NCBI GenBank assembly: GCA_021613535.1
Contig: CP075492.1
Location: forward strand, 15,562,001 to 15,626,000
Direction: 5' to 3'
Length of the DNA: 64,000 nucleotides
From: Adineta vaga
Lineage: Eukaryota > Animalia > Rotifera
Part shown: in pieces, positions 2,431-59,100 of the stretch
Position numbering within the stretch: the first letter of the stretch is position 1
Layout: every line of letters begins with the position of its first letter
The notes under the pieces: generated by a model
The model's input: the letters and a program-made list of their open reading frames with translations, nothing else
What the model was told of the DNA's origin: nothing
Databases searched by the model: none
Made by a program: the position numbers and the translations under genes

Positions 2431-3543
2431 TGAAAAGTTGTGTTTGTTACACAAAACTACTGTAAGTAAATAGAAAAAAACGACATTTTGCTTTTCTCTC
2501 TCTCCTTCTCTCGTCGATAAACAGATAGAAAACTTAAAATAATCGATCATTTTGTAAAAGAAATGTTTACCATCGCTTTTAAGAACAAACATTTTAACAC
2601 ATCAAGTAACAGAAGAAGAAAAAAAGAGAGAGAGAGAAAGAAAAGAAAAGAAAATTTAAATAGAATGAATTGAAGTATATCTCAATCTTGATTTTTACCT
2701 ATGAGAGCAAATCATACAATTAATCCTTTGTCATATGTTCTTGAAATATATCAAAATTCTCTTCTAAATGATTATTATTGTTTTTTCCAGTCAACTCGTT
2801 CTATGAAATGATTAGAACGATGTAACGTGGATGAAGATCGATATGACAAAGCTAATTAATTCTATTAATATTGAGAATACTGTATCATTTTTTGTATAAT
2901 CTAAACACGGAACTTTTATTGAATCTTTCAATAATTAATCAACACTTTGTGAGAGCATTTTGGCATGAATTTCCAAACAGAGAGAATATTTTATTTCTGT
3001 TTACGTATATCTTTTACCATTGATGTCAAATGTTTCCTATATTTTTTTCTTAGATCAATGTTAGTTTAAAGATCACATGATCATCGATTTTTTAGTCAAC
3101 TCTTTTTACAATATGTAAATTTTTCGTCTGAAAAACAAGAACGTTAATTTATTGATGGAAATAATCCTTTATTGCGTCTACTTACATGGATTTTTTGAAT
3201 AGAAGATAGCGATATCCAATCGCCAATGATTGATTAAACTAACTGATGCATGTTCCATGTGTTTGCCGATAATTATTACGACATGAAATGGAAATCAAAG
3301 ACATTCATATTTGGAATATGATTTCAAATTAACCATTTCCAAAAATTAATTCACAATTTTTCTGCTTTTTTTCAAACCTTAGATTTAATTGAAATAAGTC
3401 AAAGTACTCCATGGTAGATCTGTTGTTCAAACTCATCCTCACCCACTCTTCTTAACAAAAAGTCGCCATCATCATCATCATCATATTTTATTATTTTATT
3501 ATTTTCGCATTGTGTCAATGCTCGAAACAAAGTTCTTCAATTT

Positions 3544-3849
3544 TTATTTACCAAGTCCACCTGGAACACAGATCGGCTTGTTTGAACCACTCCATGTTCC
3601 TGAACACTGACATTGATAGGCCTGAACACTTTTTCCGTTACATGTTGTTGTGCCTACTTGAACGCAACTTCCTGTTGCCGCATTCCTACAACCTTGACAA
3701 TATGATGGACAGCTTTGCCAAAGAATACCGGTTGCAGGAGAAGACCAACGTGTACACCGACTCCATGTTTCATAACAATCCCAGGCTTCTGAAATACCCG
3801 AAAATGAGACCACTAATAACAATGTCAAAGAATACCACGTAGTTTTCAT
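3544..3849 (-). CDS. Macin-family antimicrobial peptide (theromacin/hydramacin/neuromacin-like)
   Basis: Signal peptide, then DCYETWSRCTRWSSPATGILWQSC..C..C, ending YQCQC. The mature region has 10 Cys, the theromacin-type count. Intronless. Confidence 0.9.
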   Translation of the reverse strand: MKTTWYSLTLLLVVSFSGISEAWDCYETWSRCTRWSSPATGILWQSCPSYCQGCRNAATGSCVQVGTTTCNGKSVQAYQCQCSGTWSGSNKPICVPGGLGK

Positions 3850-4434
3850 TATAATGAACGTACCACCGATAAAATTTTATTCGTTGTTTACCGTTTCGAA
3901 TGAATATATATATATATATATATATTCAGTCTTTAATCGAACTTTATTCAGCAAAAATAAAACTAGTCATCCATAATACAAATGCGCACTTCGTTTTAAC
4001 TCAAGAGCAAAAAAATGCAAATATGTCTTTTGAAGTGCTATTATGGTTTGATTTAAGAATAGTTAATTATACATGCCGTTCCACTGATTCATGATCGAAT
4101 TGCATATAAAGATATGCACTTATACATTCCGTCATTTCCTGTTACCAGTGATGTTTTAACTATTGAAAGGTACTTGATTTTAAATTAAAAAATGAATAAC
4201 ACTTTATTAGTCTTAAGAATATGGATGAACAGCAGCAACAATATACTTTCTACATGTTCACATGAATGCTCAGATCTCCGTGTAAGGAGAAACATTTCTG
4301 ATTTGTGTTTTTACATTTATTATAATATAAGTCTCGTTTTCAAGATGTTCTTAAGATAAAAGTTTATTTTATAATCGATGATGTCATTCCATAGAGATGT
4401 TCACGACTGTCTACAATGAATGACTTTTGCTCAC

Positions 4435-7400
4435 TTGATTCTATTTTAGAGCATCACTCATTTTGTTGCCCCAGATATAGAGACTCGTAATTTTCTAGAA
4501 TCAAAGAAAAGAAAGAAGATATAACAGCTAATCAGTAAACGTCGCTCACTTGATTGATTTTTAGAACATCAAGCAGATAGCACGCTCCATTATCACCGAT
4601 TTCATTAGTGTCAAGATTCAGTACAGTGATAGTCTAAAAGAAATAAAAATAGCTACCATAGAATACATCAGTGGAGATGTGTTGTCTCACTTTATTGATC
4701 TTCAGAGCATCACCAAGATGGCGTGCACCTTCATCACCGATCTGATTGCACCCGAGGTTTAGTGTGTTGACTGTCTATGATGAATATAAGAAGCTACCAT
4801 ACACGATCCATTACTACAGATCTTTTCTCACTTGATTGGTCTTCAGTGCATCACTAAGATGACGTGCGCCTACAGTACCAAACTGGTTTTTGCGAAGATG
4901 TAATTCAGTAATAGTCTATGATTAATGATAGCGTTTTCGATGCGATAGATGATCACTGATTCTGCCTCACCTGATTGCTTTTCAAGGCATCACTGAGATA
5001 ACGCGCTTCTTCAGCACCGATCTCGTTTCGTTGCAGATGTAGTATCATGAGTGTCTATGACACATAAGAATTTATGAATATCCTATAACTGCGAACTGCT
5101 CCTCTCTCACTTTGTTGATCTTCAGAGCATCACTGAGACTGCACATTCCTTCATTATGAATCTGATTGCACCATAGCTCCAATCGAGTGATTGTCTGTGA
5201 TATATAAGAACGTTAGAAATATGAAAAATAACTGCTGATGTTATCTCACTTGATTGGTTTTGAGAGTTTCACTAAGAAAACATATTCCTTCATCACCGAT
5301 CTGGTTGTCTCCAATATGTAACGTGCTAATAGTCTATTATGAATCAGATCAATGAAACTATAACAGATTAGTAGTGAAGTTGGCTCACTCGATTGGTCTT
5401 GAGAGCTTCACTGAGAGCATACAATCCTTTCGTGTCAATTTTATTACTGTCAAGAATTAGTGTTGTAATAGTCTATGATGAATAAAAACCTTGTAGATAT
5501 GATAGACGAGCATAGATATGATCTGACTTGATTGATTTGAAGAGCATCACTAAGATCATGTATTCCTTTATGACTGATCTGATTTCTCGCAAGGTTCAGT
5601 ATCTTGATTGTCTATGAAGAATGAAGACAATGAAGATATGATACCTATGTATTGTATTTCGCTCACATAATTAATTCTGAGAGCGTTTGCCAGATAACTT
5701 GCTCCTTCGTCACCAATGTGGTTGTGTTGAAGATGTAGAGTAGCAATAGTCTATTGTGAACAAGGAACGTTGAATATGTAATCAATGTGTAAAGATCTTA
5801 TTTCACTTGATTGTTCTTGAGAGCATCACAAAGATGGCGCGTACCGTCGTCTTCAATTCCATTACGTTCAAGATGCAAAATAGTGATAGCCTATCATGAA
5901 TGAGAACGTTGAATGTCCAATCAATGCGCAGAAATCTTATCTTACTTGATTGTTCTTGAGAGCATCACCAAGACAACGCGCACCATCGGAACCAATATGG
6001 TCTTTCTGAAGATTCAATGTAGTAGTTGCCTATGATAAATCCAAATCTCGTATATTCACTAAACGTGCAGAGATCTTATCATACTTGTTTGATCCTAAAG
6101 ACAATAAGAAGACGACTTTGTTGCTCATGGTTAATGGAGTTATTTCGACAATCCATATTGATGAGTGTCTATGACAGATGCGAATGATGTCAGTATGATA
6201 GATGAGCAGAAAACGTGCCTCACATGATTCGTCCTTAGAGCATCTTCTAGGTGACTTCCTCCTTCATTGCCGATCTGGTTGAATCGAAGATTCAATGTTG
6301 TGATAGTCTATGAAGAAGGAAAATATTATGGATGTGGCATATGACTGGAGTAGGTTTTTTACATGATTAGTTTTTATGGTATCTGCAAGGTGACGTGCTC
6401 CTTCAACACCGATTTGGTTATTACTAAGATCTATGTTGGTGATTGTCTATAACAAGTAAAACTCTCGTAGAAATAATAGATGAGTAGAGATGCTGTCTCA
6501 CGTGATTAACTTTTAGGGCATCAGCAAGGCGACGTGTACCTTCATCGCTGATCTTGTTCCTCGCAAGATTCAGAATGCTGATGATCTATGGTAAATGAAG
6601 GTTTTGTAGATACAATAGATGAATAGAATACGTGTCTCACATGATTTGTCTTTAGAATATCAGCAAGATGATGTGCTCCGTCACTACCGATTTGATTATC
6701 ACTAAGATATATGTTGGTGATAGTCTATAACAAATAAAACTCTCGTAGATAGAATTTAATAGATGAGCACGGTTCTTATCTTACTTGATTGCTCATCAAT
6801 AAATTAGCAAGATGGTGGACAATTTTATCGTTGATCTGTCTGGACGAAAGAGACAATATCGTGGTAGCCTATGATGAATTAGAGTTTTGTTATTATACGA
6901 TGAGTGTGTATTTTGCTTTACATTATTGATCTGCAAAGCAATATAGAGACGAATATCTCCTTCATTGCTAATGGAATTAAAGTTCCAATTCAGATCAGTG
7001 ATTGTCTATAGAATATCAGAACAATGAATGTAGGAAAGATGAATACAGCTATGGTATCACATGGTTGATATTTAGAGTATCAGCAAGATGATACGCCCCT
7101 TTGTCACCAATCTTGTTATTTTGCAGATGCAGTTTAGTGAGAGTCTATCATAAAAGAGCACGCTATAAATATGATAGATAAACAAAGATACTATCTCACA
7201 TAATTGGTCTTTAAAGCATCAGCAAGATGATACATTCCTTCATCCCCGATCTGGTTATGTTCGAGATTTAATGCGATGATTGTCTGTGGTAAATGGGAAT
7301 ATGATAAATATGACAGTTGCATAGAATACGCGTCTCACATAATTGGTCTTTAGAACGTCAGCTAGATGTTGCGCTCCTTCATCACCAATGTAATTGCGTT

Positions 7401-7617
7401 GAAAACTCAATGTAGTGACAGTCTATGATGAATAAAAAGCTGGTGAATATGTTAGATGAACAGAGATCCTGTCTCACATGATTGGTCTTAAGAGCAGCAC
7501 TGATACGACGTGCTCTTTCGTGATTGATCAGACTGAATCCAAGATACAATGTAGTGATAGTCTATTATAAATTTAAATACCGATGATATTTTATCGAAGT
7601 TTGAGATGATGCACTAC
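4435..7617. repeat. Degenerate tandem repeat, ~139-bp period (84-nt exon + ~55-nt intron unit)
   Basis: Recurring motifs ctcac-ttgattggtcttcagagcatc, ccttcatcaccgatctg and gtgatagt-ctatga, at 137-144 bp spacing (mostly 139). Confidence 0.95.
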
Positions 7618-7701
7618 CTTGTTACGATGTAAGGAATGAAAAACACGGTTGACATCAACGATACCCTTTTTGTATAGGGATAAGGAGAAATCATTAAAAC
7701 T
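4435..7701 (-). CDS. Hidden multi-exon LRR gene: 22 intact 84-nt exons, each one 28-aa RI/NLRC3-like LRR, plus a divergent 84-nt leading exon and a truncated terminal exon
   Basis: Exons (+ coords): 7618-7701 (divergent), 7478-7561, 7339-7422, 7200-7283, 7061-7144, 6922-7005, 6785-6868, 6641-6724, 6502-6585, 6363-6446, 6224-6307, 6085-6168, 5946-6029, 5807-5890, 5667-5750, 5528-5611, 5389-5472, 5250-5333, 5111-5194, 4971-5054, 4832-4915, 4691-4774, 4550-4633, then 4435-4494 (60 nt, in-frame stop). Each is flanked by YAG and GT (mostly GTGAG/GTAAG) on the minus strand and translates without stops, e.g. TVNTLNLGCNQIGDEGARHLGDALKINK, TIIALNLEHNQIGDEGMYHLADALKTNY. The start codon is not resolved. 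Confidence 0.93.
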
Positions 7702-8099
7702 CTAAATTAAAGTTAATAGATTGAAAATTGTTCGCAAAATTTTCCTGACTTGTTCGTTCAGTTCATTTCGTTACTTTGATACGGTTTAGTTTTGGGGACA
7801 GGGAGAGGATTAATCATTTTACTTGGCTTTCGTCAACGATGCTCTATATAGAAATGCTGCAAGTTATAGATTCACGGACTTATAATACGGTCTTTGTAAG
7901 TGTTATAGACTCATCCTATATATCTGTACTGTAGCAAATCATTCCGTCATATTTTATTAGAATGTTCTGTTTTAGCTAGTACCAAATCTCTGTTCTACAC
8001 TTTCAAATGAGATCGATCTACAGTATCCGCTTCTCTTATTGTGAAACGTATGATACTGAAAACTGTAATGATCCTATGTTCTGTTCACAGAAACAGGTG

Positions 8100-9870
8100 C
8101 ATAATACTACCCACGGAAAAAAATTTCAACCAATACCGCGGTTTATGAAGGTTTCTAGGTTGAAGGCTCGAAATCGTTGTTGTACACCGCAAAAGTCAGA
8201 CCTTTATTAGGTTTTTAAAAACCACTACAAAGAGCGATATTCTAAAACCGCGGTTCTTACCGATTTTCAAAAGAAAACAAATTCATCGTGGTGGTAAATT
8301 ATTTCTGTCATCTGTCCTTTTATCCTTGACTTTCCATATTAACCACTAGTCTACGCGCAATATCGACCCGTTGATCCCACACCGCGGTTAACTCTTCTAA
8401 TACCACTATCTATTTTAGATTCAACTGATTCATGTTCGATTTGAACCATTTACCGTGCGATTGTCATTCACTAATTTCATTGAACCATCTGGCCATGTTT
8501 ATACTAGTATTAAATATGATAGTCTATCTGATTAGTAATGAAAAACCTTTTCATATCTAAATATACATATCATATACAGATAAAATCTTAATAACTTCTT
8601 GAATATCTCTTCTGACAACGGTATTTATAGTATACTTTGTATAGGATCTATTAGATTGTATTTATTCTTTATAGTTATGACCATTGATATATAAACACAC
8701 TTTATTCTTGTAAAATTATACCTGGTGAGAGGTAGAGATTGATCAGAATTTGTAGATATTTAACCGCGATTTTGTGCGATGCGATATTGAAACGTTTAAC
8801 TTTCGAGTAGAGTATTGCATTTTAGTAAATAGATGTGAATCTCAAAACTAAAACACATGTAACTTATTAAAAAAGTGAAAACGTCGCGATTTTATCGATT
8901 AACAAAACTAGTTTATGCATATTTCTATATCTGATAATGGACAAATTCCTGAATATTATCAGAAGTAGTCATCTGAATTAATTGTGACGAAGGTATTTGA
9001 TATGTTCACATTGTCTAAAATCTGCTAAATCCTTAAAGGTATAGTTGACGTTTATCAACATTTATTGTCGATTTGGTTTATTTTCTCTTTAGCTTCAACC
9101 TCTCAAATTATAATTGTTCTAATTTAAATTACAGTATATACTGTCATAAAAAAATCGAAAAATGAATTTGAATATTACCGTTATTTGGCATTTTATAAAA
9201 ACATTCTGTTTTTATTTCAAAATCACACGTTTCTACACTGTAAAACAGTGGGGAATAACCAACGATAAAAGCGTTTGTGATGGTCTCATAAACGTAGAAA
9301 AAGATTTATGAATTTTCAATGTGCAAAGAACTCCGTTTTTATTGTACTTGACGAAGATATAAATCCTTTTGGATTTATGAAGCACTTCTAGTAAAAGAAA
9401 AGAGGTTTATCATATGTTGCGAATCATCAAATCGTTATTTTTTACAACGTAGTTTTTTCCAACTTTCCATATTGTAGAATGATGGTAAATTTAGTTTTAG
9501 TCGATGAGAAAATGTTTTTATACCATACTGTGACTGTTAAGTAGTAAGTTTTAGTGATATAACCTTATTAGAAAAATAACGTTAGAAAATTCAGTCATAC
9601 TTTGAAAATAAATTGATTCAAATAATGATACTTTTCAAGACAATGCACAGATCGCGGTTTCTAATAGGAATTTCGCGAATAAAAATATCGTAAAAGATGA
9701 AGGTTTTATAATATCATAACTAGTTACCAGCATACCGTATTCTTTTGAAATCGCGGTTTTATTCAAGTATACCGCGGTGCGTCTTAATGGCGGTGTAACA
9801 TACCGTGGTTAACTACGTTGTTTACTACCCATTGCGGTCTTCAAGACAGTTTGTGATTACTACCCTAAAC
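8100..9870. mobile_element. Possible degraded DNA-transposon ends with (A)CCGCGG/TCGCGG subterminal motifs
   Basis: About ten ACCGCGG-like GC-rich motifs cluster near 8135-8390, 8760-8890 and 9650-9840 in otherwise very AT-rich DNA. No transposase ORF or clear TSD seen. Confidence 0.3.
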
Positions 9871-10696
9871 TTTGCTTTTCCAGATTGACTAAGGTAAACT
9901 GTCTGCCATAATTTAGTAAATATTTATTTGAATAATCATTATTGAGTTAAATAGAAAAGTTCTACGCTATGTAAGTTGTATCTCCAATTATGAGTAAAAT
10001 AGTAATCTTGCTCATCCAAAGTTAATTTCTTTGTTCAAAGTGGACATTGTTTGATTGCTAATATTTTGTTTCGGTTAGCCACAATGAACGAGCATTGTGA
10101 ATGGAGATATTAAATAAATGGAAACGGTGTTAAAATACAGGCTAACTATGATGGCTACTTCTATGAAGGGAAAAGTACTCATGTCTCAAATCGGAAACAC
10201 TCCTCATGAAAGCATTAAAAATTTTTTCGGAATAATTCAAAAGTCTAGGTAGACACGTTAATGAGGATCAGGATGTTTAACTAAATTCCTGAACTGTACA
10301 GAATTTTCTACCATTCATGTGCCTGTTTTTACCTAAAATAACTGAGCTGAGATAGTGAATCATTATCATTGTCCAAATGCAATTATCTGTGCAATTACCA
10401 ATTACTTGACTAGCTTTTTTTTACTATGAGATAAAATAGACTTTGACATGACCATCACTATCTTTCATTCGTGCAACAGCGAGCAGATCGTGACCTAATA
10501 AAAACAGTGAAACTGTGGACAAACCAACAGATAAGCGATTATTTTCGAGATGAAGATCCTGACTACAGCGAAGGAAATATAATGATTTGTCCAAGAGGAT
10601 GACTCCACAATATAAACAGAAACATTATCCTAGAAAGGTAATCAGAGTGGCTCAATTCACAATCCATTTTCTGACCATAAAAGACAGAAAAACGGA

Positions 10697-10873
10697 TCAA
10701 ATAATGATCAATACGAAAGATATAAATATGGAAAATGTGTGTATTATTTTATTGAATCGTATGCAAACATCTTGAATCGAAATAAGAATGTCGAAAGGAG
10801 TTAAATGATCCAAGATGCGATACATGAGTTCAACGGGTAAAATGTGAAATGATGGTTTAATGTTGCCAGCCAT
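10697..10873 (-). CDS. F-box domain exon (possible N-terminus of the LRR array gene, or a truncated remnant)
   Basis: MAGNIKPSFHILPVELMYRILDHLTPFDILISIQDVCIRFNKII matches the F-box consensus (LPxEL..IL.HL...D.....VC.RF). It runs into non-domain sequence and a stop, with no strong donor at the domain end. Confidence 0.75.
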   Translation of the reverse strand: MAGNIKPSFHILPVELMYRILDHLTPFDILISIQDVCIRFNKIIHTFSIFISFVLIII

Positions 10874-12380
10874 ATCGATATGATATCTGCAATGTTGCAT
10901 ATATGTGTATGCAATAGAACGGAAATGATTTTGTATCAGAAAATATGTGTTTATAAATAAAGCATTTTCAATTGTTTATGATGATGCAATGTTTTATGTC
11001 ATTGAAATAATAAATGAAAAAAGCACGTTATGAGAGAAAAGCTTAATAGCCGTCACTGTATGCAGCCATTTCCGTTCGTTCGTTCTGATCTTTTATTGCT
11101 ATTCTGTTGTTTTTCCTTTTTCTTTCGTTCTATTTAATATTTGTTATTGCATCAACAAACTGTAGCAATCATGTCTTTCTCGATTGAATACAAATTCATA
11201 CAGTAGGATAGATTCGCTCGAATAAACACTGTATACTTGTTACCACTATATTTGATGTTCATTCGATTCTGTCTATGCGTCATTTAGTTTTTTCTAACTG
11301 AAAAAGAGAGATGATAAGCAAGCGAACGATATTATTACAATTATCGAATAGATTATATTTCATTCTTGAGTTTTTACGACTATTTTCGACTTGATCAGTA
11401 GAATAAAATGGAGTTCTATGAAAAATACTAAATATGTGGTATGAGCAATTATACCAGAAGAATTATTAGAAAAAAATGGATTTCTATGTCTTTCAACATA
11501 TACCAAAGAAAGCAAAGTGTACCAAAATCTAATGTGTTTTTGAACTCAATGAAGTAACACTTATTAATTTGTACATATTCTTTTCTGAGTGATAATAGAC
11601 ATTGTTCAATAAAAAAAGAAATGTATAGTTAAGTTTAAACTACTTACGAAACTATATCAAACTATTTTATTCGAACTAAAACGGTTATTATCAAACAACT
11701 GATAATTGCTCAGTATGTCATGTATGTATGTATTTTCGTATGTAAATATTGACAGAAAAACAAACTTAGCTGAATATTCTTTTTAAGATAGATTTCATAC
11801 AATCGGAAATGACGCATTTGAATATAATTTATTTTCACCATTCGGTATTGGTTGTTTGTTTTATTACGAAACCATAGCCGACACTATTGTGGACATACAT
11901 AATAAAAGTTTAATAACTACGAAGAGAAAATTATTCAGATATATGAATGTGGATGATGAAATATCCTAAGATACGAATTTGACTGTATTAATTATACCTT
12001 CAAGAGATTTAACTCGTATTCTGTATCGTACGATGATGTATACAATACACTCACAACACAAAAACTACTAATTAATACGAAAGGGAAGAGAAAAAAAGAG
12101 TCGATGATTTCAGTGTTAAACAATAAAAAATACTATTGTTTGTATTCATTTAACATAAAATAAAAAGTCACGTGGTGATCAACGATAAAAAAAAGGGGCG
12201 AGCATGTATGTCCTCTTGTTAATCGTCACTTCTTCTTTTAATCAATCTGATTATATACAAGATAAGATCCAATCGAGAAAGTAACAATGAGTGAACCGAA
12301 GAAGATACCAGACCGTATCAGTTAGTGCAAGACTATATACGCGCTACATTGACAACAAAAAGGATTTTGTGCACCAAAAA

Positions 12381-17776: not shown

Positions 17777-18064
17777 TTAAATCAGCAAATATATTGACTC
17801 GATTTCATATTGCATATAAGAACGAGCAAAGAATTTACTGGATATTGTAAGGATCAGCAAAGACGTTGACTCGATATCATATTGTATATAAGAACGAGCA
17901 AGGAATTTACTGGATATTGTAAGGATCAGCAAAGACGTTGACTCGATATCATATTGTATATAAGAACGAGCAAGGAATTTACTGGATATTGTAAGGATCA
18001 GCAAAGACGTTGACTCGATATCATATTGTATATAAGAACGAGTAAAAGAATTTGCTGTATACAT
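17777..18064. repeat. 66-bp tandem repeat (~4 copies, decaying further to ~18200) in the LINE 3' UTR
   Basis: The unit gactcgatatcatattgtatataagaacgagcaaggaatttactggatattgtaaggatcagcaaagacgtt repeats, giving a 22-aa periodicity in the spurious ORF. Confidence 0.9.
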
Positions 18065-18316
18065 GAATCGGTTTAAAGATTGGCTCGATATTATATTATA
18101 TATAAGAATGCGATCAATAAATAACTGAATAGAACGAAAGAACGATACAGCATATAGATTGAATCGACTTCTTATTTTGTATAAGAACGAGTTAAACGAA
18201 GTAGCTGAATAGTATATTTGATTGCGATATATCGTTTTTTACATCGATTCGACTGACACAAGAATAGTCTATTCTCTCGATGTTACTATTATATGTAATG
18301 GTTGGTGATTTCTTTT

Positions 18317-41305: not shown

Positions 41306-44300
41306 ATGAAAACAAAGATCTTTTCTTCACTCGTCGTCATTTACTTGTAAGTTAAAACAATCAACTTAATGATATTTTTCAATGATGAAAAGTAACAATC
41401 TTTTTTATTAAAGATATTTGATTACTAAAATCTTCGCACTTAATTTATGTCCAACAGCACAATGGTCAATAAGAGGATCAACAGTAGCTGGTGCATCAGG
41501 ATCTCAAGCAACACGTCTTTCTAGTCCAACAGATGTTATTGTTGACGAGACAAACTCAATTTATGCTCTAGACAGTGGAAATTATCGTATATTGAAATTT
41601 TCTCCTACAAATGCAATAAATGGTACTGTTATCATCAAAAGCTCAAGTGGAACTCAATTAAATCAATTTTCATCAAGTAATGTTCGCATATCATTTAGAT
41701 TTTTGCTGAAGTAATCGATTTCGTTTTCTTAGTGGATATGATAAGTATGGATCAAGATGGAAATTTCTATATATTAGATAGTGGTTTATCACGTATAACA
41801 AAATGGAATCTATCGATGAATACAACAGATCTTGTTATTAATGGAAGTTCATTCGTCAATTCTAATATGGGAAATGATGATTTTCTTGATGAACCAATGG
41901 GAATGTTTATTGAAATGAATACAATGTTTATATGGATTGCTGATACAAACAATCATCGTATTGTTAAATGGTTGAATTCGACAACAGTTCAAATTATTTG
42001 TGGTAGTTATGGATCAAAATCAGATCAATTCAAATATCCGCAAGATATATTTGTTGATGTGAATAATAACTATGCATTTTACGTCGTAGATACAGATAAT
42101 CATCGTATACAAATGTATTTAGCTAATCAAACAAATGGAACAACAGTTGCTGGAATAACAAATTATTATGGAACACAACTTAATCAATTATTTTATCCGA
42201 CAGCAATTTGTGTTGATCAAAGTCAATTTATGTATATTGTTGATAATGAGAATTCACGAATTCTTCAATGGAAAGTTGGTAATCCATATGGGAAACTTAT
42301 AGTAGGAACAGATACTTATGGTGGTTCAACATCGGATAAACTTTCACTTCCCTTGAGTTTGACATTTGATTCAAGTGGACGACTTTATGTTGTCGATAAT
42401 GATAATAATCGTATTCAAATGTACAATGTTACTTGTTGTAAGTTTTGTGATTTTCTTTCTTTCGGTGAATTGTTTGTTTTTGTTAAGTATCAACAAATGG
42501 GACGATAACAACAACATCATTACCATTAACGACAACGCAAAGTAAGAAAGCTTTTCAGTAGTCTCTTTTAAGCTAAAATGTGAAACTCACATTCACTTAT
42601 TTTTCCTGAGAAAATATATGTGAGTTTCACAAAATTCGATCCAATGAGTAGAATAGAAGCGAAGAGTTTTGTTTCTCTTTCAGCAGCTGGTTCCTTATCA
42701 CAATGCGATGGACCAGTTTGGTCAACAAATGCAGTAACAGTCGCTGGTTCATCCATAGGTGAAGAAGGTTCAGATTCTTCTCATTTGAGCTATCCATATG
42801 ATATGTGGTTGGATTCAAATGACACAATTTATGTATTGGATACTAGTAATTATCGTATACAATTATTCTATTCAAATCAAATATCAGGAACAACAGTTTT
42901 CAACGCAACTCAAGGAAATGGTGTCAATCAATTTTCTAACAGTAGATGTTGTTGCTGTTTTTCTTCTGATTAAACTATATGTTCTTTTCTTAGTGGTCGG
43001 ATTTAGTATTGATTCTAATGGAAATATTTATATTCTTGATGATACAAATAGTCGGGTAATAAAATTCCCTCCGGGATCATCGAATGGAACAATCGTTGCT
43101 GGAGGAAACGGCCGAGGTAGTGCATTAAACAAATTAAATTATCCATCTGGATTTTTTCTTGAACCAATTACATCGTACATTTGGATTGCCGATACAAGTA
43201 ATTGTCGTATTGTTAAATGGATGTCATTAACAAATATTTCATTGGTTGCTGGAGCATCATGTGGCGCAAAAGCAAACCAATTTCGGTATCCTTATGATGT
43301 CTTTGTCGATGTCGATGATTCTAATACAATGTACGTTGTGGATTCAGAAAATTTCCGAATTCAAAGATGGTTTCAAGGTGCTTTTAATGGAACAACTGTT
43401 GCAGGACAATCAGGTGTTGAAGGAAGTGGACTGAATCAACTATCATATCCATCAGGAATGATTTTAGATAAAAATAAAACAATGTATATTGCTGATGCAG
43501 GTAATAATCGAATCATACGATGGATTATTGGATTAAGTTATGGTTCGATTATTGCTGGAACAAATACATATGGAAGTTTGCCATATCAATTATATGGACC
43601 AGAACGACTTCGATTTGATTCCATGGGAAATCTCTGTGTTGTCGATTATGAAAATAATCGAATTCAAAAGTTTTCGTTAATTTGTTGTAAGTTTAGCGAA
43701 CTAATTTCGTCCTTGTTACGATGATTTTTTCAGCTCCAACGATGGTAAAAACAACATCGATAGTCGATATGTCTACTTCAAGTAAATTGAAACATTTCTC
43801 TAAATTCAATGTCATATCTTCGAGGTTTTTTAGATCCTACAACAACAACTTCTAATCCACTGATGACAAGCAATCCACCATCAACAAGTAACAGAGAAAT
43901 AAAAATGAATTTGAACGAAAAAAAATCAATAAATTTGTTTTGTGATTATAGCATTAATGGCATCTTCGACAAAAATGACAATACTATCAACAACACCGAG
44001 TACAGCATCCATTACAACACCGAGTACAGCATCCATGGCCTCATCAACAACACCGAGTACAGCATCCATGGCCTCATCAACAACACCGAGTACAGCATCC
44101 ATGGCCTCATCAACAACACCGAGTACAGCATCCATGGCCTCATCAACAACACCGAGTACAGCACCCATGGCCTCATCAACAACACCGAGTACAGCACCCA
44201 TGGCCTCATCAACAACACCGAGTACAACACCCATGGCCTCATCAACAACACCGAGTACAGCACCCATGGCCTCATCAACAACACCGAGTACAGCACCCAT

Positions 44301-44700
44301 GGCCTCATCAACAACACCGAGTACAACACCCATGGCCTCATCAACAACACCGAGTACAGCACCCATGGCCTCATCAACAACACCGAGTACAGCACCCATG
44401 GCCTCATCAACAACACCGAGTACAACACCCATGACATCATCAAAATTAACATCAATATCAACACTTCTTCAAACGTCAATGAACACATCCATGGCTTTAT
44501 CAACGACGCTAATTACAGCACTTATGACATCATCAAACACAACATTCATGGCATCGTCTACGTCAATGCAAAATTCAACAATATCTGGAAATCTATCAAC
44601 ACCATATCAATCATCATCATCACTATCATTATTCGATTATTTTAATTTTAAAATATTTACAATAATTATCAATATTCTGATATATCTTTCAAATAGTTGA
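41306..44700 (+). CDS. Secreted/anchored protein: signal peptide, two NHL beta-propellers, Ser/Thr mucin-like stalk, hydrophobic C-terminus (multi-exon)
   Basis: MKTKIFSSLVVIYL|ILITKIFA signal. NHL motifs WIADTNNHRIVKW, YVVDTDNHRIQ, YIADAGNNRIIRW in two blocks. STTPSTA(S/P)MAS repeats. Terminal FKIFTIIINILIYLSNS. Confidence 0.85.
43987..44434 (+). repeat. 33-bp coding minisatellite (~13 copies) with a 99-bp higher-order unit
   Basis: Unit tcaacaacaccgagtacagca(t/c)ccatggcctca; variants ordered AS then (AP,AP,TP)x3. Confidence 0.95.
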
Positions 44701-54631: not shown

Positions 54632-55938
54632 ATGATGCATAAAAATTCTGCGTATGTCGAATCTGCCACGAGAAACACTAAACTATCCAAATGGTGGAAT
54701 CATCGTTGGTTCAAGATTATATTGATTTCTATTTTTATTTTGATAATTTTTGTGGTTACTCTCTCTCTATTGCTAAAGTTCGTTATTCTCATTCCGAAGA
54801 AGACACAAGACAATACAACTACTATAATATCAACGACATCGTCAGTAATAACCACGATTACAACCATTCCGCAGTCGCGTAAGTTTTAGAATCAAGTTTT
54901 TTTTATTAGGCTGAAGAGATAATACAGAAACAAAATCTTACTTAAGGATGGTCTAATACTGGTAATATGCATTATACACGACGTATTCATACAGCAACAC
55001 CATTAACAAATGGAAAGGTATTAGTTACTGGTGGATATAATGGTTTAACTTTAAAAAGTGCTGAATTATACGATCCATTAACAGGAAATTGGACAATAAC
55101 TCACAGTATGAATAATATACGATATGGACATGCAGCATCTCTATTATTGAATGAAAAAGTGTTAGTCACTGGCGGATATAATAATGGATTGGTTTTAAAT
55201 GGTTCGGAATTGTATGATCCATCAACAGAAAGTTGGATAATCACGACTAATATGAATTATGCACGAAATTTTCATACAACATCAATATTAGCTAATGGAA
55301 AAGTATTAGCTACAGGTGGAGTTCATGGCCTAGGTGCTCTAAACAGTGCAGAAATATATGACCCAATAACTGAACGTTGGATAATTACTGGTAATATGAA
55401 TTATGCACGAAATGGACACACAGCAACTGTATTATCAGATGGAAAAGTATTGATTACTGGTGGAAAAGATCGAGATTTTACTTTGAACACAGCTGAACTA
55501 TATGATCCATTGACAGGCAATTGGACACTGACTGGTAATATGAGTGAAGCACGAGGAAGTCATACAGCATCTCTGTTGTTAAATGGAAAAGTATTAGTTA
55601 CTGGTGGACACAATGGTGAACTCATTTTAAATAGTGCTGAATTATACGATCTATCAAAAGAGATTTGGACAAAAACTGCAAATATGAGTCATGCATTAGA
55701 AGTCCATACAGCATCTGTGTTATCAAATGGGAAAATTTTAATAACTGGTGGGTATAAAGGTAATTCAGCCGAATTATATGATCCATTGGAAGGAATTTGG
55801 ATAAGTGCTGGTGAGATGAATGATACACGCATGTCACATACAGCATCTTTATTATCAAATGGGAAAGTATTAATTACTGGTGGATATGACGCACATAATT
55901 ATTTAAATACCGCTGAATTATATGATCCAGTCCATTGA
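54632..55938 (+). CDS. Type II membrane protein with a Thr-rich stalk and 7 Kelch repeats
   Basis: Exon 1 has a TM and TTT stalk, with donor gtaagt at 54879. The intron runs to ~54946. Seven R..HTA..L.NGKVL.TGG....SAELYDP..W units follow. Confidence 0.88.
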
Positions 55939-56130: not shown

Positions 56131-59100
56131 TCAACTAGTAATAAATAATCGATGAACGCTTTGTGGCATAATAGTTTTCATAAAGTCACACATTCCTTTT
56201 CGAAACACTTCCGATGGTAGAATAAATACGAAGACAATAGCCATACATGGTAGAAAAGCCATACAATAGCTTATTAGAGTAATGTATGGTTGCTGATCAA
56301 GTTTTTTACATACAAATATAAAACTTAGAACAAGTCGAGGTACAGTAAGACAGCTAAGTACAATCGGTGCAATTAGTATATGTTTATGTTGACTGATTGA
56401 TTTTTTTATCATGTCCATTTGTAGTTTCAGTCGTGCGCTTTTGCTTCGATCCGGCGCAGTGGTTTTTTTCTTTATCTGATTTTTTGAAGCCGTTGTTTTC
56501 TGAATAATAATGATACTACTAGCAAGATTAATTATCAATGGTAATATGAACAAGAGAATATTCGAAACTGAATATAGGACAAGAATAACTTGTCGATCAG
56601 CATTTAATGTAAGTACACACCAAGCTCGTTCATCATGTGTATCAATAACAATGCGACGAAAGATCAATTCTGGAGAAGAGATAAGAGCAAGAAATATGAA
56701 TACACATCCGACAATCCATTTAGCACGACGTTCACTTATTGCGCGAGTGTATTTGGTTGGATAGCTAACAGCTTGTGTCCGATCCATAGCCACACATGCA
56801 TCTATCCATTCACAACTTGTTGGCCACCATTTAAGTAAAAATTCAATAAGAGAACAACAAATATTGGTTTGTTTGGGGTTTAAGATTATGATTATTTTGC
56901 ACATGAGTACTATCATAGTTAATAAGCCGGTAATGGATGAGACAAACAAGTAAAATCCACATCCAGATTCGCGTGTCTTCTTCTGAGTAAATGTACCAGT
57001 AGCCAACGTATTGAAAATAAAACCAAATGCAATCAATATGCAAAGAACTAGAACAGCTATTTTAATCGTTGTACTCTGTTGAAAAATATTCTTTGCGTCT
57101 AATCGAATATGTGAACCAATAATCGCATCGAGTGATAAACTATAACCAGCTCTTGAAAATTGACAAACTGATCCATAACTACATGGTTCACAAATACATA
57201 CTGCAACAGTTGGACATGTTTCATCATCTTGTACACACATACCACGATCATGACATTTATTCCATAAACATCCACGAGGTGTTGTCTCAAAATTAAAACA
57301 AATAGCATGATTGGTTTCATCGCATAAGCACATGAGTTTATCATCGTAGAAACATTTTGATTGTTGATTGAGACATGGACGTTGATAATTCTTTACTCGA
57401 CGTAGAGGTAACTGAGCAAGTATAGTCTGATCGAATAGTTCGTGGATTGAATGGCATCGATGAGAAGACCGAATTTCGGTACTGATTTCAAGTAAAGGTG
57501 GTATTACAGTATTTTTACGTAACAGCAAAAGATAGTAATCAAATTGATATTGATGTTCATATAGTTGAATGAAAATAAGTTTGGGTACTCTTAATCTATT
57601 ATCCAAAAAGAAAGTAAAATTCACTTTGTCTCGATGAAATCGATGAAAGTATGTGAAAGGACGAGGTTCAATTACCACACCCATTTCCATAATATGAATA
57701 AAAGCGATATTTGATGATGGAATACTGATATCTCGAGAGAATGAAACATAAATCCGTGGTTTCACTTTTTCACATTGTTCACCGAACCATTCCTCATCAC
57801 ATAAGCACATGAATTGCCTTACTGGATCATGACGTATATCAAGTGGTATACATTTTCCATGTCCATTACAATTATTTTTCGTACATGGATCGAAAACAAT
57901 GAGACAGCGACGGCCAGTACGATTTAAAGGACAAACACAAATTTCTCGATTAAGATCAATATCATATCCAAGACATAGAGAATTACTCGAACAAGTTGTA
58001 CAGTTAGGATAAGTTATTGTTGTTGTCAACATTGATTCAGTAATCATACTCGATATGTTTGTCACAAGAAGTTCTTTTGCTATACGACGAACAGGTAAGA
58101 ATTCAAATGAGAGAGGAAAATGCCAAGAAACAAAGTGTTTTAGTGTTGTTAGAATGAATGCATGAATATATATAGTATGATTAACAAATGATAACGATGA
58201 ATCATCAATTGGATAGAGTAATTCTATCATATATTGTGGCAAACAATGTTGTTGTGGTGTATAAATAAATTGTTCATGAGATATAATAGACGATGTAGTA
58301 TTATGTCGCACTAATAAAACGACAAATTTGAATATTGGAATTTGATTATCAACAAAATTTCCTATGCGAAGGTAAAGTATAAGAGAAATTCGTTTTCGTT
58401 GAAATTGGCAACGATCACCATAATAATAATTAGGACAGAGACAAAAAAAGCCAGGTGGATGAATGGTTGAACGAACATACATACCAGAATTACACTGCCA
58501 TAAGACGATATTGGTCAATGTTGCTGATTGTTGTTCTGAATCTCGATATTTAAGTACATGGTTAACGTTTTGACTTGGATACTGAGGAAATTTACTTATA
58601 TCAAATAATGGTGCACTTTCATGATTGTTAACTTCACAGAAGAGAAGATCTTCACCTTCTGAACACTTATTAACACCCGTACAGAAATCTATATCAATCA
58701 AGGTATCAATCATTTGATTAAAAAGGATGTTTAATTTGCTAAAGGATGTATTTTGATCAACATGATTTAAGAAAATTAACAATCTATGATGATGTATCTC
58801 ATTCCTCGGATACTATGTTATCCTACTGCTCCCATACATGTATTTCTCTTACTGTTCATAACAAATAGATGGTTATATGAACATTTCTGAACGAGAACTT
58901 GACACAAACTTTGATGCTTTTCCTCCTAGAGAAATTTAGACATGATAAACTACTTACTGCTATTTATATATCGACCATCTCGGCATCGGAATTTTCCAGA
59001 ATCACACAGAGTCTGTCGATCATTATTGAGCCAGATACATGCAATTGTTTCATCATCGTTGCTGGGACAATCTCGATGACAATCACATATTTGTTGGCGT

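What the first reader, a model, noticed from the sequence alone, without database searches (positions are those of the whole stretch)
4435..7701. Hidden array of 22 interchangeable single-LRR exon cassettes: candidate combinatorial recognition system
Seen: what looks like a non-coding 139-bp satellite, absent from the ORF track, is 22 consecutive minus-strand exons of exactly 84 nt. All are phase 0-0 and stop-free, and all keep AG/GT ends. The scaffold is conserved (T(I/L)xxLxLxxNxIGDEGaxhLxdaLkxN), while the residues in and next to the beta-strand (xxLxLxxNx) differ in every exon: ELHLRKNQ, RLELWCNQ, TLILDSNK, ALNLEHNQ, TLSFQRNY, TLNLRFNQ. Established: these positions form the ligand-binding concave face of RI-type LRRs, and one-repeat-per-exon structure is known from NLR genes. 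Inference: any subset of exons can be skipped, duplicated or swapped without breaking frame. The locus could therefore generate many binding surfaces by alternative splicing or by recombination/gene conversion, like a Dscam/VLR-style diversifier in a microscopic invertebrate. It sits next to a macin gene and downstream of an F-box exon.
Basis: partly seen in the sequence, partly recalled or inferred. Interest (0 to 1): 0.93.

Follow-up and report, generated by a model that had tools for sequence, protein, structure and literature searches.

The report
One copy of a rotifer F-box/LRR family
The "hidden satellite" is a real string of 23 small exons, each coding one leucine-rich repeat. It is one diverged and possibly decaying copy of a large rotifer family of F-box/LRR ubiquitin-ligase adaptor genes, and I found no sign that it shuffles its exons to make many receptors.

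Summary
On the minus strand, 23 exons of exactly 84 nt (7701-4550) keep AG/GT ends and are stop-free, spaced about 139 bp apart. A truncated 60-nt last exon with a TAG follows. Seventeen exons match Pfam LRR_6 singly.

- **Family:** every similar array I fetched has a homologous F-box exon upstream. The genome holds at least 150 such F-box exons, and the scan has 17 notes of such arrays on other DNA of this genome.
- **Exon order:** it is collinear with a paralog 54 kb away (L023).
- **Splicing:** the only spliced RNA contig laid here belongs to that paralog. It joins six exons in genomic order, with none skipped.
- **Expression:** no spliced transcript of this locus was seen, although the neighbouring macin gene was.
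- **Lesions:** the ancestral exon-1 donor is lost. Intron 1 is 3 kb long and holds a 1.7-kb dispersed repeat. The last repeat is shortened and ends in a stop.
- **Selection:** against the paralog, omega is 1.0 at binding-face codons and 0.21 at scaffold codons, so there is no excess.

Slow germline change is real: a conversion tract with L023, one exon-to-exon conversion, and different exon counts between paralogs. Younger sister arrays show strong amino-acid diversity at face codons. That is the interesting lead.

The parts
10715..10873 (-). Exon 1: the F-box. ATG at 10873. The open frame runs on to a TGA at 10699-10697. A possible in-frame cryptic donor GTATTG lies at 10714 (inferred). The ancestral donor ('HTYxxYQ|GTAAG' in the paralogs) is missing.
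   Evidence: Pfam F-box and F-box-like. 76% amino-acid identity to the F-box exon of L023, and homologs upstream of all ten other arrays. Comparison of the exon ends.
7702..10714 (-). Intron 1 (inferred), about 3.0 kb. In the paralogs it is roughly 0.1-0.2 kb (L024, L016, L015) or about 1.26 kb (L023).
   Evidence: No ORF or domain of note inside it.
8110..9845 (-). A 5'-truncated copy of a dispersed repeat (transposable-element-like, no long ORF) inside intron 1.
   Evidence: 58 other matching places in the genome at 67-94% identity. The same 3' end '...CCGTGGG' in three other copies. Boundaries from BLAST against five copies. Raised DNA depth in run X2.
7618..7701 (-). Exon 2 (array exon #1): an 84-nt degenerate N-terminal cap repeat ('SFN...HRNK'). 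It is homologous to exon 2 of the paralogs ('TFN...RNK').
   Evidence: No Pfam match.
4550..7561 (-). Array exons #2-#23: 22 exons of 84 nt, phase 0-0, each one 28-residue RI-type LRR, separated by 53-60-nt GT-AG introns. Exons #2, #6, #7, #12 and #13 are degenerate.
   Evidence: Pfam LRR_6 exon by exon.
4435..4494 (-). Last unit: a shortened LRR exon (24 nt shorter than in the paralogs) with an in-frame TAG at 4443-4441, two codons before the ancestral donor. The C-terminal cap exon found in distant paralogs is not recognisable downstream.
   Evidence: Alignment of the 3' ends of five loci. Sequence.
4689..5088 (-). Tract of 88-96% identity (per 100-column block) to the inverted paralog L023 (C3:15507000-15516500), against 58-78% over most of the rest. 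Most likely gene conversion.
   Evidence: Sliding identity. Introns after #20 and #21 are 53/55 and 57/57 identical.
6363..6724 (-). Exons #8 and #10 are 82% alike but only 68% like their positional orthologs in L023. This points to exon-to-exon conversion or duplication after the paralogs split.

Best explanation
The stretch is the LRR part of an ordinary germline gene. It belongs to a large, lineage-specific family in this rotifer genome (100.8 Mb in 6 contigs, 32% GC; consistent with Adineta vaga, from memory).

The family gene plan is:
- one F-box exon;
- an 84-nt cap exon;
- a run of 84-nt phase-0 exons, each coding one 28-residue ribonuclease-inhibitor-type LRR;
- introns of about 55 nt between them.

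By homology the product would be the substrate-recognition subunit of an SCF ubiquitin ligase. The F-box would dock on Skp1, and the concave face of the LRR solenoid would bind the protein to be ubiquitinated (inferred).

The exons are spliced constitutively, in genomic order. This is shown only for the closest paralog, over six exons.

Variation arises slowly in the germ line through tandem exon duplication and loss, and through gene conversion within and between paralogs (shown). It does not arise through alternative splicing or somatic assembly.

This copy has an altered 5' end (donor lost, repeat in a 3-kb intron 1) and an altered 3' end (shortened last repeat with a stop). It gave no spliced transcript. 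Whether it still works is about even odds.
For: **Anatomy:**

**Domains:** the F-box, and LRR_6 in 17 of 23 exons.

**Family:**
- Similar arrays occur on all six contigs.
- A homologous F-box exon lies upstream of every array fetched.
- The genome has 150 scored F-box-exon matches out of 258 candidates.
- The scan holds 17 notes of such arrays.
- Annotated F-box + LRR_6 proteins with the same 84-nt exon period occur in two other NCBI assemblies.

**LRR class:** the relatives' repeats are closest to LRRC34, ribonuclease inhibitor, NOD2 and the NLRPs.

**Fixed order:** exons are collinear with L023.

**Splicing:** a 1346-nt contig of run X6 joins exons exactly at the predicted borders (skips of 57 and 55 nt, CT..AC on the plus strand). 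All 14 of its variant letters in 4730-5283 match L023. The letters between its pieces decode to L023 exon #21. So it shows L023 exons #20-#25 in order.

**Constraint:**
- Omega against L023 is 0.35 overall and 0.21 at scaffold codons.
- There are no stops in 644 codons, and all 46 splice dinucleotides are kept.

**Germline exchange:**
Against: - No RNA of this locus was seen. In X6, the neighbouring macin gene gives an exact contig and the paralog gives a spliced one.
- The ancestral exon-1 donor is gone. The in-frame GTATTG 12 nt further on is only a guess.
- The F-box exon and the array are not shown to lie on one transcript here.
- The F-box scores sit at Pfam's cut-offs.
- Skp1 binding and any substrate are untested.
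- The RNA evidence consists of assembled contigs, which drop rare isoforms. Low-level exon skipping cannot be excluded.
Confidence: 0.6

Rival explanations
1. Dead or dying copy. The locus is a recently inactivated or silent paralog of the F-box/LRR family. The open exons are simply not yet eroded.
For: - The ancestral donor of exon 1 is lost.
- A 1.7-kb dispersed repeat sits in an intron 1 that is 3 kb long, against roughly 0.1-1.3 kb in the paralogs.
- The last LRR exon has a 24-nt deletion and a TAG before the old donor. The C-terminal cap exon is unrecognisable.
- There is no spliced contig in X6, although the paralog and the neighbouring macin gene are present.
Against: - There are no stops in 23 x 28 codons, and all 46 AG/GT dinucleotides are intact. 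By my rough estimate, about 4-5% of random substitutions create a stop. On that basis neutral drift beyond about 2-3% divergence would probably have introduced one.
- Omega is about 0.33 even inside the young conversion tract.
- An in-frame GT exists 12 nt after the old donor.
- The expressed paralog L023 also lacks the C-terminal cap exon.
- An intronic repeat need not harm a gene.
Confidence: 0.35
2. The 84-nt phase-0 exons are interchangeable cassettes, combined by alternative splicing or by somatic recombination or conversion, so that one locus gives many binding surfaces (Dscam/VLR-like).
For: - Any subset of exons could be skipped without breaking the frame.
- Face residues differ between exons.
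- Conversion between cassettes has happened in evolution.
- Sister arrays show an excess of amino-acid variety at face codons.
Against: - Exon order is conserved between paralogs.
- The paralog's mRNA contig joins six exons consecutively.
- This locus gave no spliced RNA at all.
- Every cassette has ordinary GT-AG sites inside a complete ORF. That is unlike VLR donor cassettes or Dscam's mutually exclusive clusters (established knowledge).
- Omega at face codons against the paralog is 1.0.
- With at least 150 germline family members, diversity is already explained.
Confidence: 0.04

Closest known systems
F-box/LRR (FBXL-type) substrate adaptors of SCF ubiquitin ligases, such as Skp2, FBXL2 and plant TIR1 (established knowledge)
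   Same: An N-terminal F-box followed directly by an LRR solenoid. The Pfam architecture is F-box(-like) + LRR_6. The presumed mode of action is the same: the F-box binds Skp1 and the LRR binds the substrate.
   Different: The repeats here are 28-residue ribonuclease-inhibitor-type ('NxIGDEGAxxLaxaLxxN'). By sequence they are closest to LRRC34, RNH1, NOD2 and the NLRPs. No FBXL structure appears among the 60 best matches listed. Other differences are the uniform one-repeat-per-84-nt-exon plan and a family of at least 150 members.
Ribonuclease inhibitor and the LRR domains of NOD-like receptors
   Same: The repeat class and consensus match. Repeats correspond to symmetric exons. From memory, the RNH1 and NLRP genes carry repeat-sized or two-repeat exons; I could not confirm this in the papers held.
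   Different: There is no NACHT or other nucleotide-binding domain. In all paralogs the F-box exon leads straight into the repeats. Here all repeats are 28 residues, rather than alternating 28 and 29.
Expanded, fast-evolving F-box gene families of nematodes and plants
   Same: These are large lineage-specific F-box expansions, with positive selection reported in the substrate-binding part and a proposed role in defence (PMC8120010). Here there are at least 150 F-box exons, and the sister arrays show an excess of amino-acid variety at face codons. Expansion of LRR and other repeat-protein families in Adineta vaga has been noted in general terms (PMC3846280).
   Different: The substrate domain differs: RI-type LRR here, against mainly FTH/FBA2 in Caenorhabditis (my knowledge). 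The cassette-exon gene structure also differs. I found no paper describing this rotifer family.
Lamprey VLR assembly and insect Dscam1 alternative splicing
   Same: Modular units whose variable residues lie on a binding surface.
   Different: VLR starts from an incomplete germline gene and copies flanking, intron-less donor cassettes into it somatically. Dscam1 picks one exon from each cluster of alternatives. Here the cassettes form one complete ORF with ordinary introns, and in the paralog they are joined consecutively.

Membership tests
F-box/LRR SCF substrate adaptor | F-box domain at the N-terminus | tested here: met
   Pfam F-box 23.4 bits (cut-off 20.5) and F-box-like 24.3 bits (cut-off 24.3) on 10697-10900, minus strand. 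The LPxE(L)xxRILxxL motif is kept.
F-box/LRR SCF substrate adaptor | LRR domain C-terminal to the F-box, in the same protein | tested here: inconclusive
   They lie on the same strand in the right order. Exon 2 is homologous to the paralogs' exon 2. Annotated relatives carry both domains in one product. For this locus no transcript was seen, and the ancestral donor is lost.
F-box/LRR SCF substrate adaptor | Binds Skp1 and recruits substrates to Cul1 | not testable with these tools
   No complex prediction was run. It needs co-immunoprecipitation or yeast two-hybrid with the rotifer's Skp1.
Ribonuclease-inhibitor-type LRR | 28-29-residue repeats with LxxLxLxxNxIGDxGaxxLaxaL, matching LRR_6 and RI/NLR structures | tested here: met
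   17 of 23 exons match PF13516 singly. The consensus is TITTLNLQRNQIGDEGARHLADALKTNQ. Family relatives hit LRRC34, RNH1, NOD2 and the NLRPs at E 1e-34 to 1e-10.
NOD-like receptor (NLR) | NACHT/NB-ARC nucleotide-binding domain upstream of the LRRs | tested here: not met
   Between the F-box exon and the array there are only intron sequence and a dispersed repeat, with no ORF of note. In the paralogs the F-box exon is followed within roughly 0.1-0.2 kb (1.26 kb in L023) by the cap exon and the LRRs.
Dscam-like alternative-exon diversifier | Transcripts that include different subsets of the cassette exons | tested here: inconclusive
   The one spliced contig, from paralog L023, has six exons in genomic order with none skipped. 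There is no RNA for this locus. Contigs drop rare isoforms.
VLR-like somatic assembly | Incomplete germline gene plus flanking donor cassettes without splice sites | tested here: not met
   All cassettes have AG/GT ends and together form an uninterrupted reading frame within one gene.

The most novel reading that the evidence does not exclude
This locus alone is not the device. The family it belongs to may be a bdelloid-specific intracellular recognition repertoire: at least 150 F-box/RI-LRR adaptors built from exon-sized cassettes.

In this reading, germline gene conversion and unequal crossing-over keep exchanging and homogenising the units. Selection keeps the concave-face residues different, which yields many substrate specificities, perhaps against pathogen, foreign or transposon proteins.

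Three results hint at this in the young sister arrays:
- In L017 and L022 the introns are more alike (0.93) than the exons (0.83-0.87).
- Among-repeat pN/pS at face codons is 1.0-7, against 0.3-0.5 elsewhere.
- Distinct variants at the five face codons are 99 nonsynonymous to 6 synonymous, against 111 to 68 at the other 23 codons.

The same pattern appears faintly in the conversion tract here.
Probability: 0.3. Interest if true: 0.7.

Novelty: new member of a known kind. Interest (0 to 1): 0.33.

Why it matters
As a single locus it matters little. It is one diverged copy of a big family, and it may be decaying.

The useful outcome is the re-reading. The many 'hidden cassette arrays' that the scan flags in this genome are F-box/LRR genes with a fixed gene plan. 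Their mRNA is ordinary: exons are joined in order.

If the family-level signal holds, bdelloid rotifers would join nematodes and plants as lineages that expanded F-box adaptors, possibly for defence. The signal is amino-acid diversity focused on the binding face while introns are homogenised. Here the gene structure would make exon-sized exchange especially easy. That is testable with long-read cDNA, comparison of clones and species, and Skp1 and substrate pull-downs.

Tried and rejected
- **RNA search:** no listed run is on record as RNA. The RNA-guessed runs held next to none of the array's words. A spliced transcript should keep about 39% of them (my estimate).
- **Read laying, one call:**
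  - X4 gave nothing, not even the macin gene, so it is uninformative.
  - X1 gave two unspliced 151-nt pieces (4429-4579 and 4729-4879) at depth about 3. These could be DNA or pre-mRNA and are uninformative.
  - Three 'joints' in the DNA run X2 (5505 to 7538, 6683 to 7164, 7010 to 7552) have sides of only 21-28 nt. I take them as mis-laid paralog contigs, not exon-number alleles.
- **First reading of the X6 contig:** I first took the spliced X6 contig and the variant X2 contig at 4830-5249 for the other haplotype of this locus. I rejected that, because all 14 variants match paralog L023.
- **The search of protein representatives with the F-box exon:** it returned mostly short exon-level ORFs. 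Only a few spliced family proteins came up, and no product of this locus.
- **Paper searches:** searches for a description of the family and for one-LRR-per-exon NLR genes found nothing specific.
- **NLR reading:** rejected, because there is no NACHT domain.
- **The intron-1 repeat also lying next to another F-box exon at C3:742011-742154:** I considered a shared origin and left it as probable coincidence. That copy starts at a different point and is no closer than other copies.
- Exons were searched one by one by reference. No structure or complex prediction of the joined product was made. Joined exons were used only inside local scripts for identity and dN/dS counts.
Full report
**1. What is there**

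Reading the minus strand of 4200-8000 and scanning for AG + 84 nt + GT without in-frame stops gives 23 consecutive exons. They run from 7701-7618 to 4633-4550, with starts 137-144 bp apart (mostly 139) and introns of 55-60 nt.

A 24th unit lies at 4494-4435. It is only 60 nt long and carries a TAG at 4443-4441.

Tandem Repeats Finder sees only 2.8 copies of the 139-bp period, because the units are about 60% alike. This explains why the array looks like a weak satellite.

Chance is excluded. Outside the array only 17% of AG-84-GT segments are open, and none are periodic. A 2013 DNA run holds an identical 3363-nt contig over 5226-8588.

Searched one by one, 17 of the 23 exons match Pfam LRR_6. 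Exons #1, #2, #6, #7, #12 and #13 do not. The consensus, TITTLNLQRNQIGDEGARHLADALKTNQ, is the ribonuclease-inhibitor type.

**2. It is a family, and the F-box belongs to it**

The window is G000:C3:15562001-15626000. The genome has 100.8 Mb in six contigs and the window is 32% GC. That fits the chromosome-level Adineta vaga assembly (from memory, not tested).

A DNA search of the genome finds similar arrays on all six contigs, many with an exact 141-bp period. In ten fetched regions I found 12-23 LRR exons of 84 nt each. In every one, a homolog of the window's F-box exon lies upstream on the same strand.

In the intact paralogs the plan is as follows:
- exon 1 is about 150-153 nt and ends 'HTYxxYQ|GTAAG';
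- a short intron follows;
- an 84-nt cap exon 'TFN...RNK' comes next;
- the LRR exons follow.

The window's first array exon ('SFN...HRNK', 7701-7618) is that cap exon.

An F-box exon used as query finds 150 scored matches out of 258 candidates in this genome. The scan itself holds 17 notes of such arrays elsewhere in the genome, none followed up.

Annotated proteins with F-box-like + LRR_6 occur in two other NCBI assemblies, GCA_905250015.1 and GCA_905250095.1. One of those loci shows the same 84-nt exon period. Their repeats are closest to LRRC34, ribonuclease inhibitor, NOD2 and the NLRPs, not to FBXL structures.

**3. Are the cassettes interchangeable?**

The closest paralog, L023 (C3:15507000-15516500), lies 54 kb away in the opposite orientation. 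It is collinear with this locus exon by exon, including the degenerate exons, apart from a few whole-exon gaps: at least 25 units there against 23 + 1 here. The last three or four exons keep their identity even in paralogs only about 65-70% alike on C1, C6 and C3. So the exons have fixed positions.

Exchange does happen, but slowly:
- Identity to L023 rises from 58-78% to 88-96% in 4689-5088, introns included. This is a conversion tract.
- Exons #8 and #10 are 82% alike but only 68% like their positional orthologs. L023 shows the same effect at another register: its #10 and #12 are 86% alike.

**4. RNA**

No listed run is on record as RNA. Four runs were laid on 3450-9400.
- **X6** gives an exact 293-nt contig on the macin gene, which serves as a positive control.
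- **X6** also gives a 1346-nt contig spliced exactly at the predicted borders (4774 to 4832 and 4915 to 4971, with CT..AC ends on the plus strand). That contig carries 5-9 other letters per exon.
  - All 14 listed variants in 4730-5283 match L023.
  - Its loose 3' end and the letters between its pieces decode to L023 exons #25 and #21.
  - It is therefore the paralog's mRNA, with exons #20-#25 joined in order and none skipped.
- **X1** holds two unspliced 151-nt pieces.
- **X4** holds nothing.

No spliced contig of this locus was found. Contigs cannot show rare isoforms or low expression.

**5. Is this copy intact?**

For intact:
- 644 codons are without a stop, and all 46 splice dinucleotides are kept.
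- Omega against L023 is 0.35 overall and 0.21 at scaffold codons. It is 0.33 in the young tract.

Against:
- The ancestral exon-1 donor is missing. Only an in-frame GTATTG 12 nt further on could replace it.
- Intron 1 is about 3.0 kb. It contains a 1736-bp, 5'-truncated copy of a dispersed repeat (8110-9845) with 58 other matching places in the genome.
- The last LRR exon lacks 24 nt and stops early. The C-terminal cap exon seen in distant paralogs is gone, though it is also gone in the expressed L023.

I put the odds that it is still functional at about even.

**6. Selection on the binding face**

Against L023 (positional exon pairs among #2-#18):
- face codons (positions 4, 6, 8, 9, 11): omega 1.01;
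- scaffold codons: 0.21;
- other codons: 0.31.

dS is about 0.9, so the estimate is rough. The face is unconstrained or mixed, not shown to be positively selected. Among the repeats of this array everything is saturated.

In young sister arrays (L017-L022) the picture is sharper:
- Among-repeat pN/pS at face codons is 1.0-7, against 0.3-0.5 elsewhere.
- Distinct variants are 99 nonsynonymous to 6 synonymous at face codons, against 111 to 68 elsewhere. The arrays are related, so the pooled P value is not independent. Single arrays give P = 0.002-0.07.
- In L017 and L022 the introns are more alike than the exons.

This family-level lead lies outside the finding's coordinates.

**7. Verdict**

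The thing is an F-box/RI-type-LRR gene of a large germline family, presumably an SCF substrate adaptor. It is constitutively spliced as far as the paralog shows, and it evolves by exon duplication and conversion.

The Dscam/VLR-style reading is not supported for this locus.

General expansion of LRR and other repeat families in A. vaga has been noted (PMC3846280). Expanded, positively selected F-box families are known from nematodes (PMC8120010). I found no description of this particular family.

Exons were searched singly by reference.

Noticed in passing
window 3544-3849 (-): A macin-family antimicrobial-peptide gene (Pfam Macin 5.8e-11; 101 aa with a hydrophobic N-terminus). It is present as an exact 293-nt contig in the RNA-guessed run X6.
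   Followed up: partly
window 8110-9845 (-): A dispersed repeat of about 1.74 kb, 5'-truncated here, with no long ORF and many 'AACCGCGGT'-like motifs. It has 58 other matching places in the genome at 67-94% identity and a shared 3' end '...CCGTGGG'. Another copy sits just after a different F-box exon at C3:742011-742154.
   Followed up: partly
L017 (C4:14586000-), L020 (C6:12110000-), L021 (C2:15714000-), L022 (C1:1355000-), L019 (C5:7942000-), L018 (C1:13781000-): Young, homogenised F-box/LRR arrays of 12-23 exons, mostly with a 141-bp period. In L017 and L022 the introns are more alike (0.93) than the exons (0.83-0.87). Amino-acid variety is concentrated at repeat positions 4, 6, 8, 9 and 11 (99 N to 6 S distinct variants, against 111 to 68 elsewhere).
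   Followed up: partly
L025 3001-5359 (GCA_905250015.1): The annotated 258-aa product P0005 leaves out several intact 84-nt LRR exons that lie inside its gene range (for example 4343-4987). This is probably a gene-prediction error rather than evidence of exon skipping.
   Followed up: no
window 43942-44700 (+), tandem repeat 44014-44443: Thirteen copies of a 33-nt unit, 97% alike. In one frame they read as a Ser/Thr/Pro-rich 11-residue repeat (TTPSTAPMASS), which looks mucin-like. An NHL-repeat-like ORF lies just upstream at 42798-43724.
   Followed up: no
window 54967-55938 (+) and 56131-58782 (-): A Kelch-like gene with repeats of about 48 residues (144-nt period), next to a large EGF-like plus multi-pass membrane ORF of 883 aa. 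These are further examples of the repeat and receptor families said to be expanded in this rotifer (PMC3846280).
   Followed up: no
window 17781-18108: A 72-nt tandem repeat, 3.9 copies, 94% alike. Not examined.
   Followed up: no
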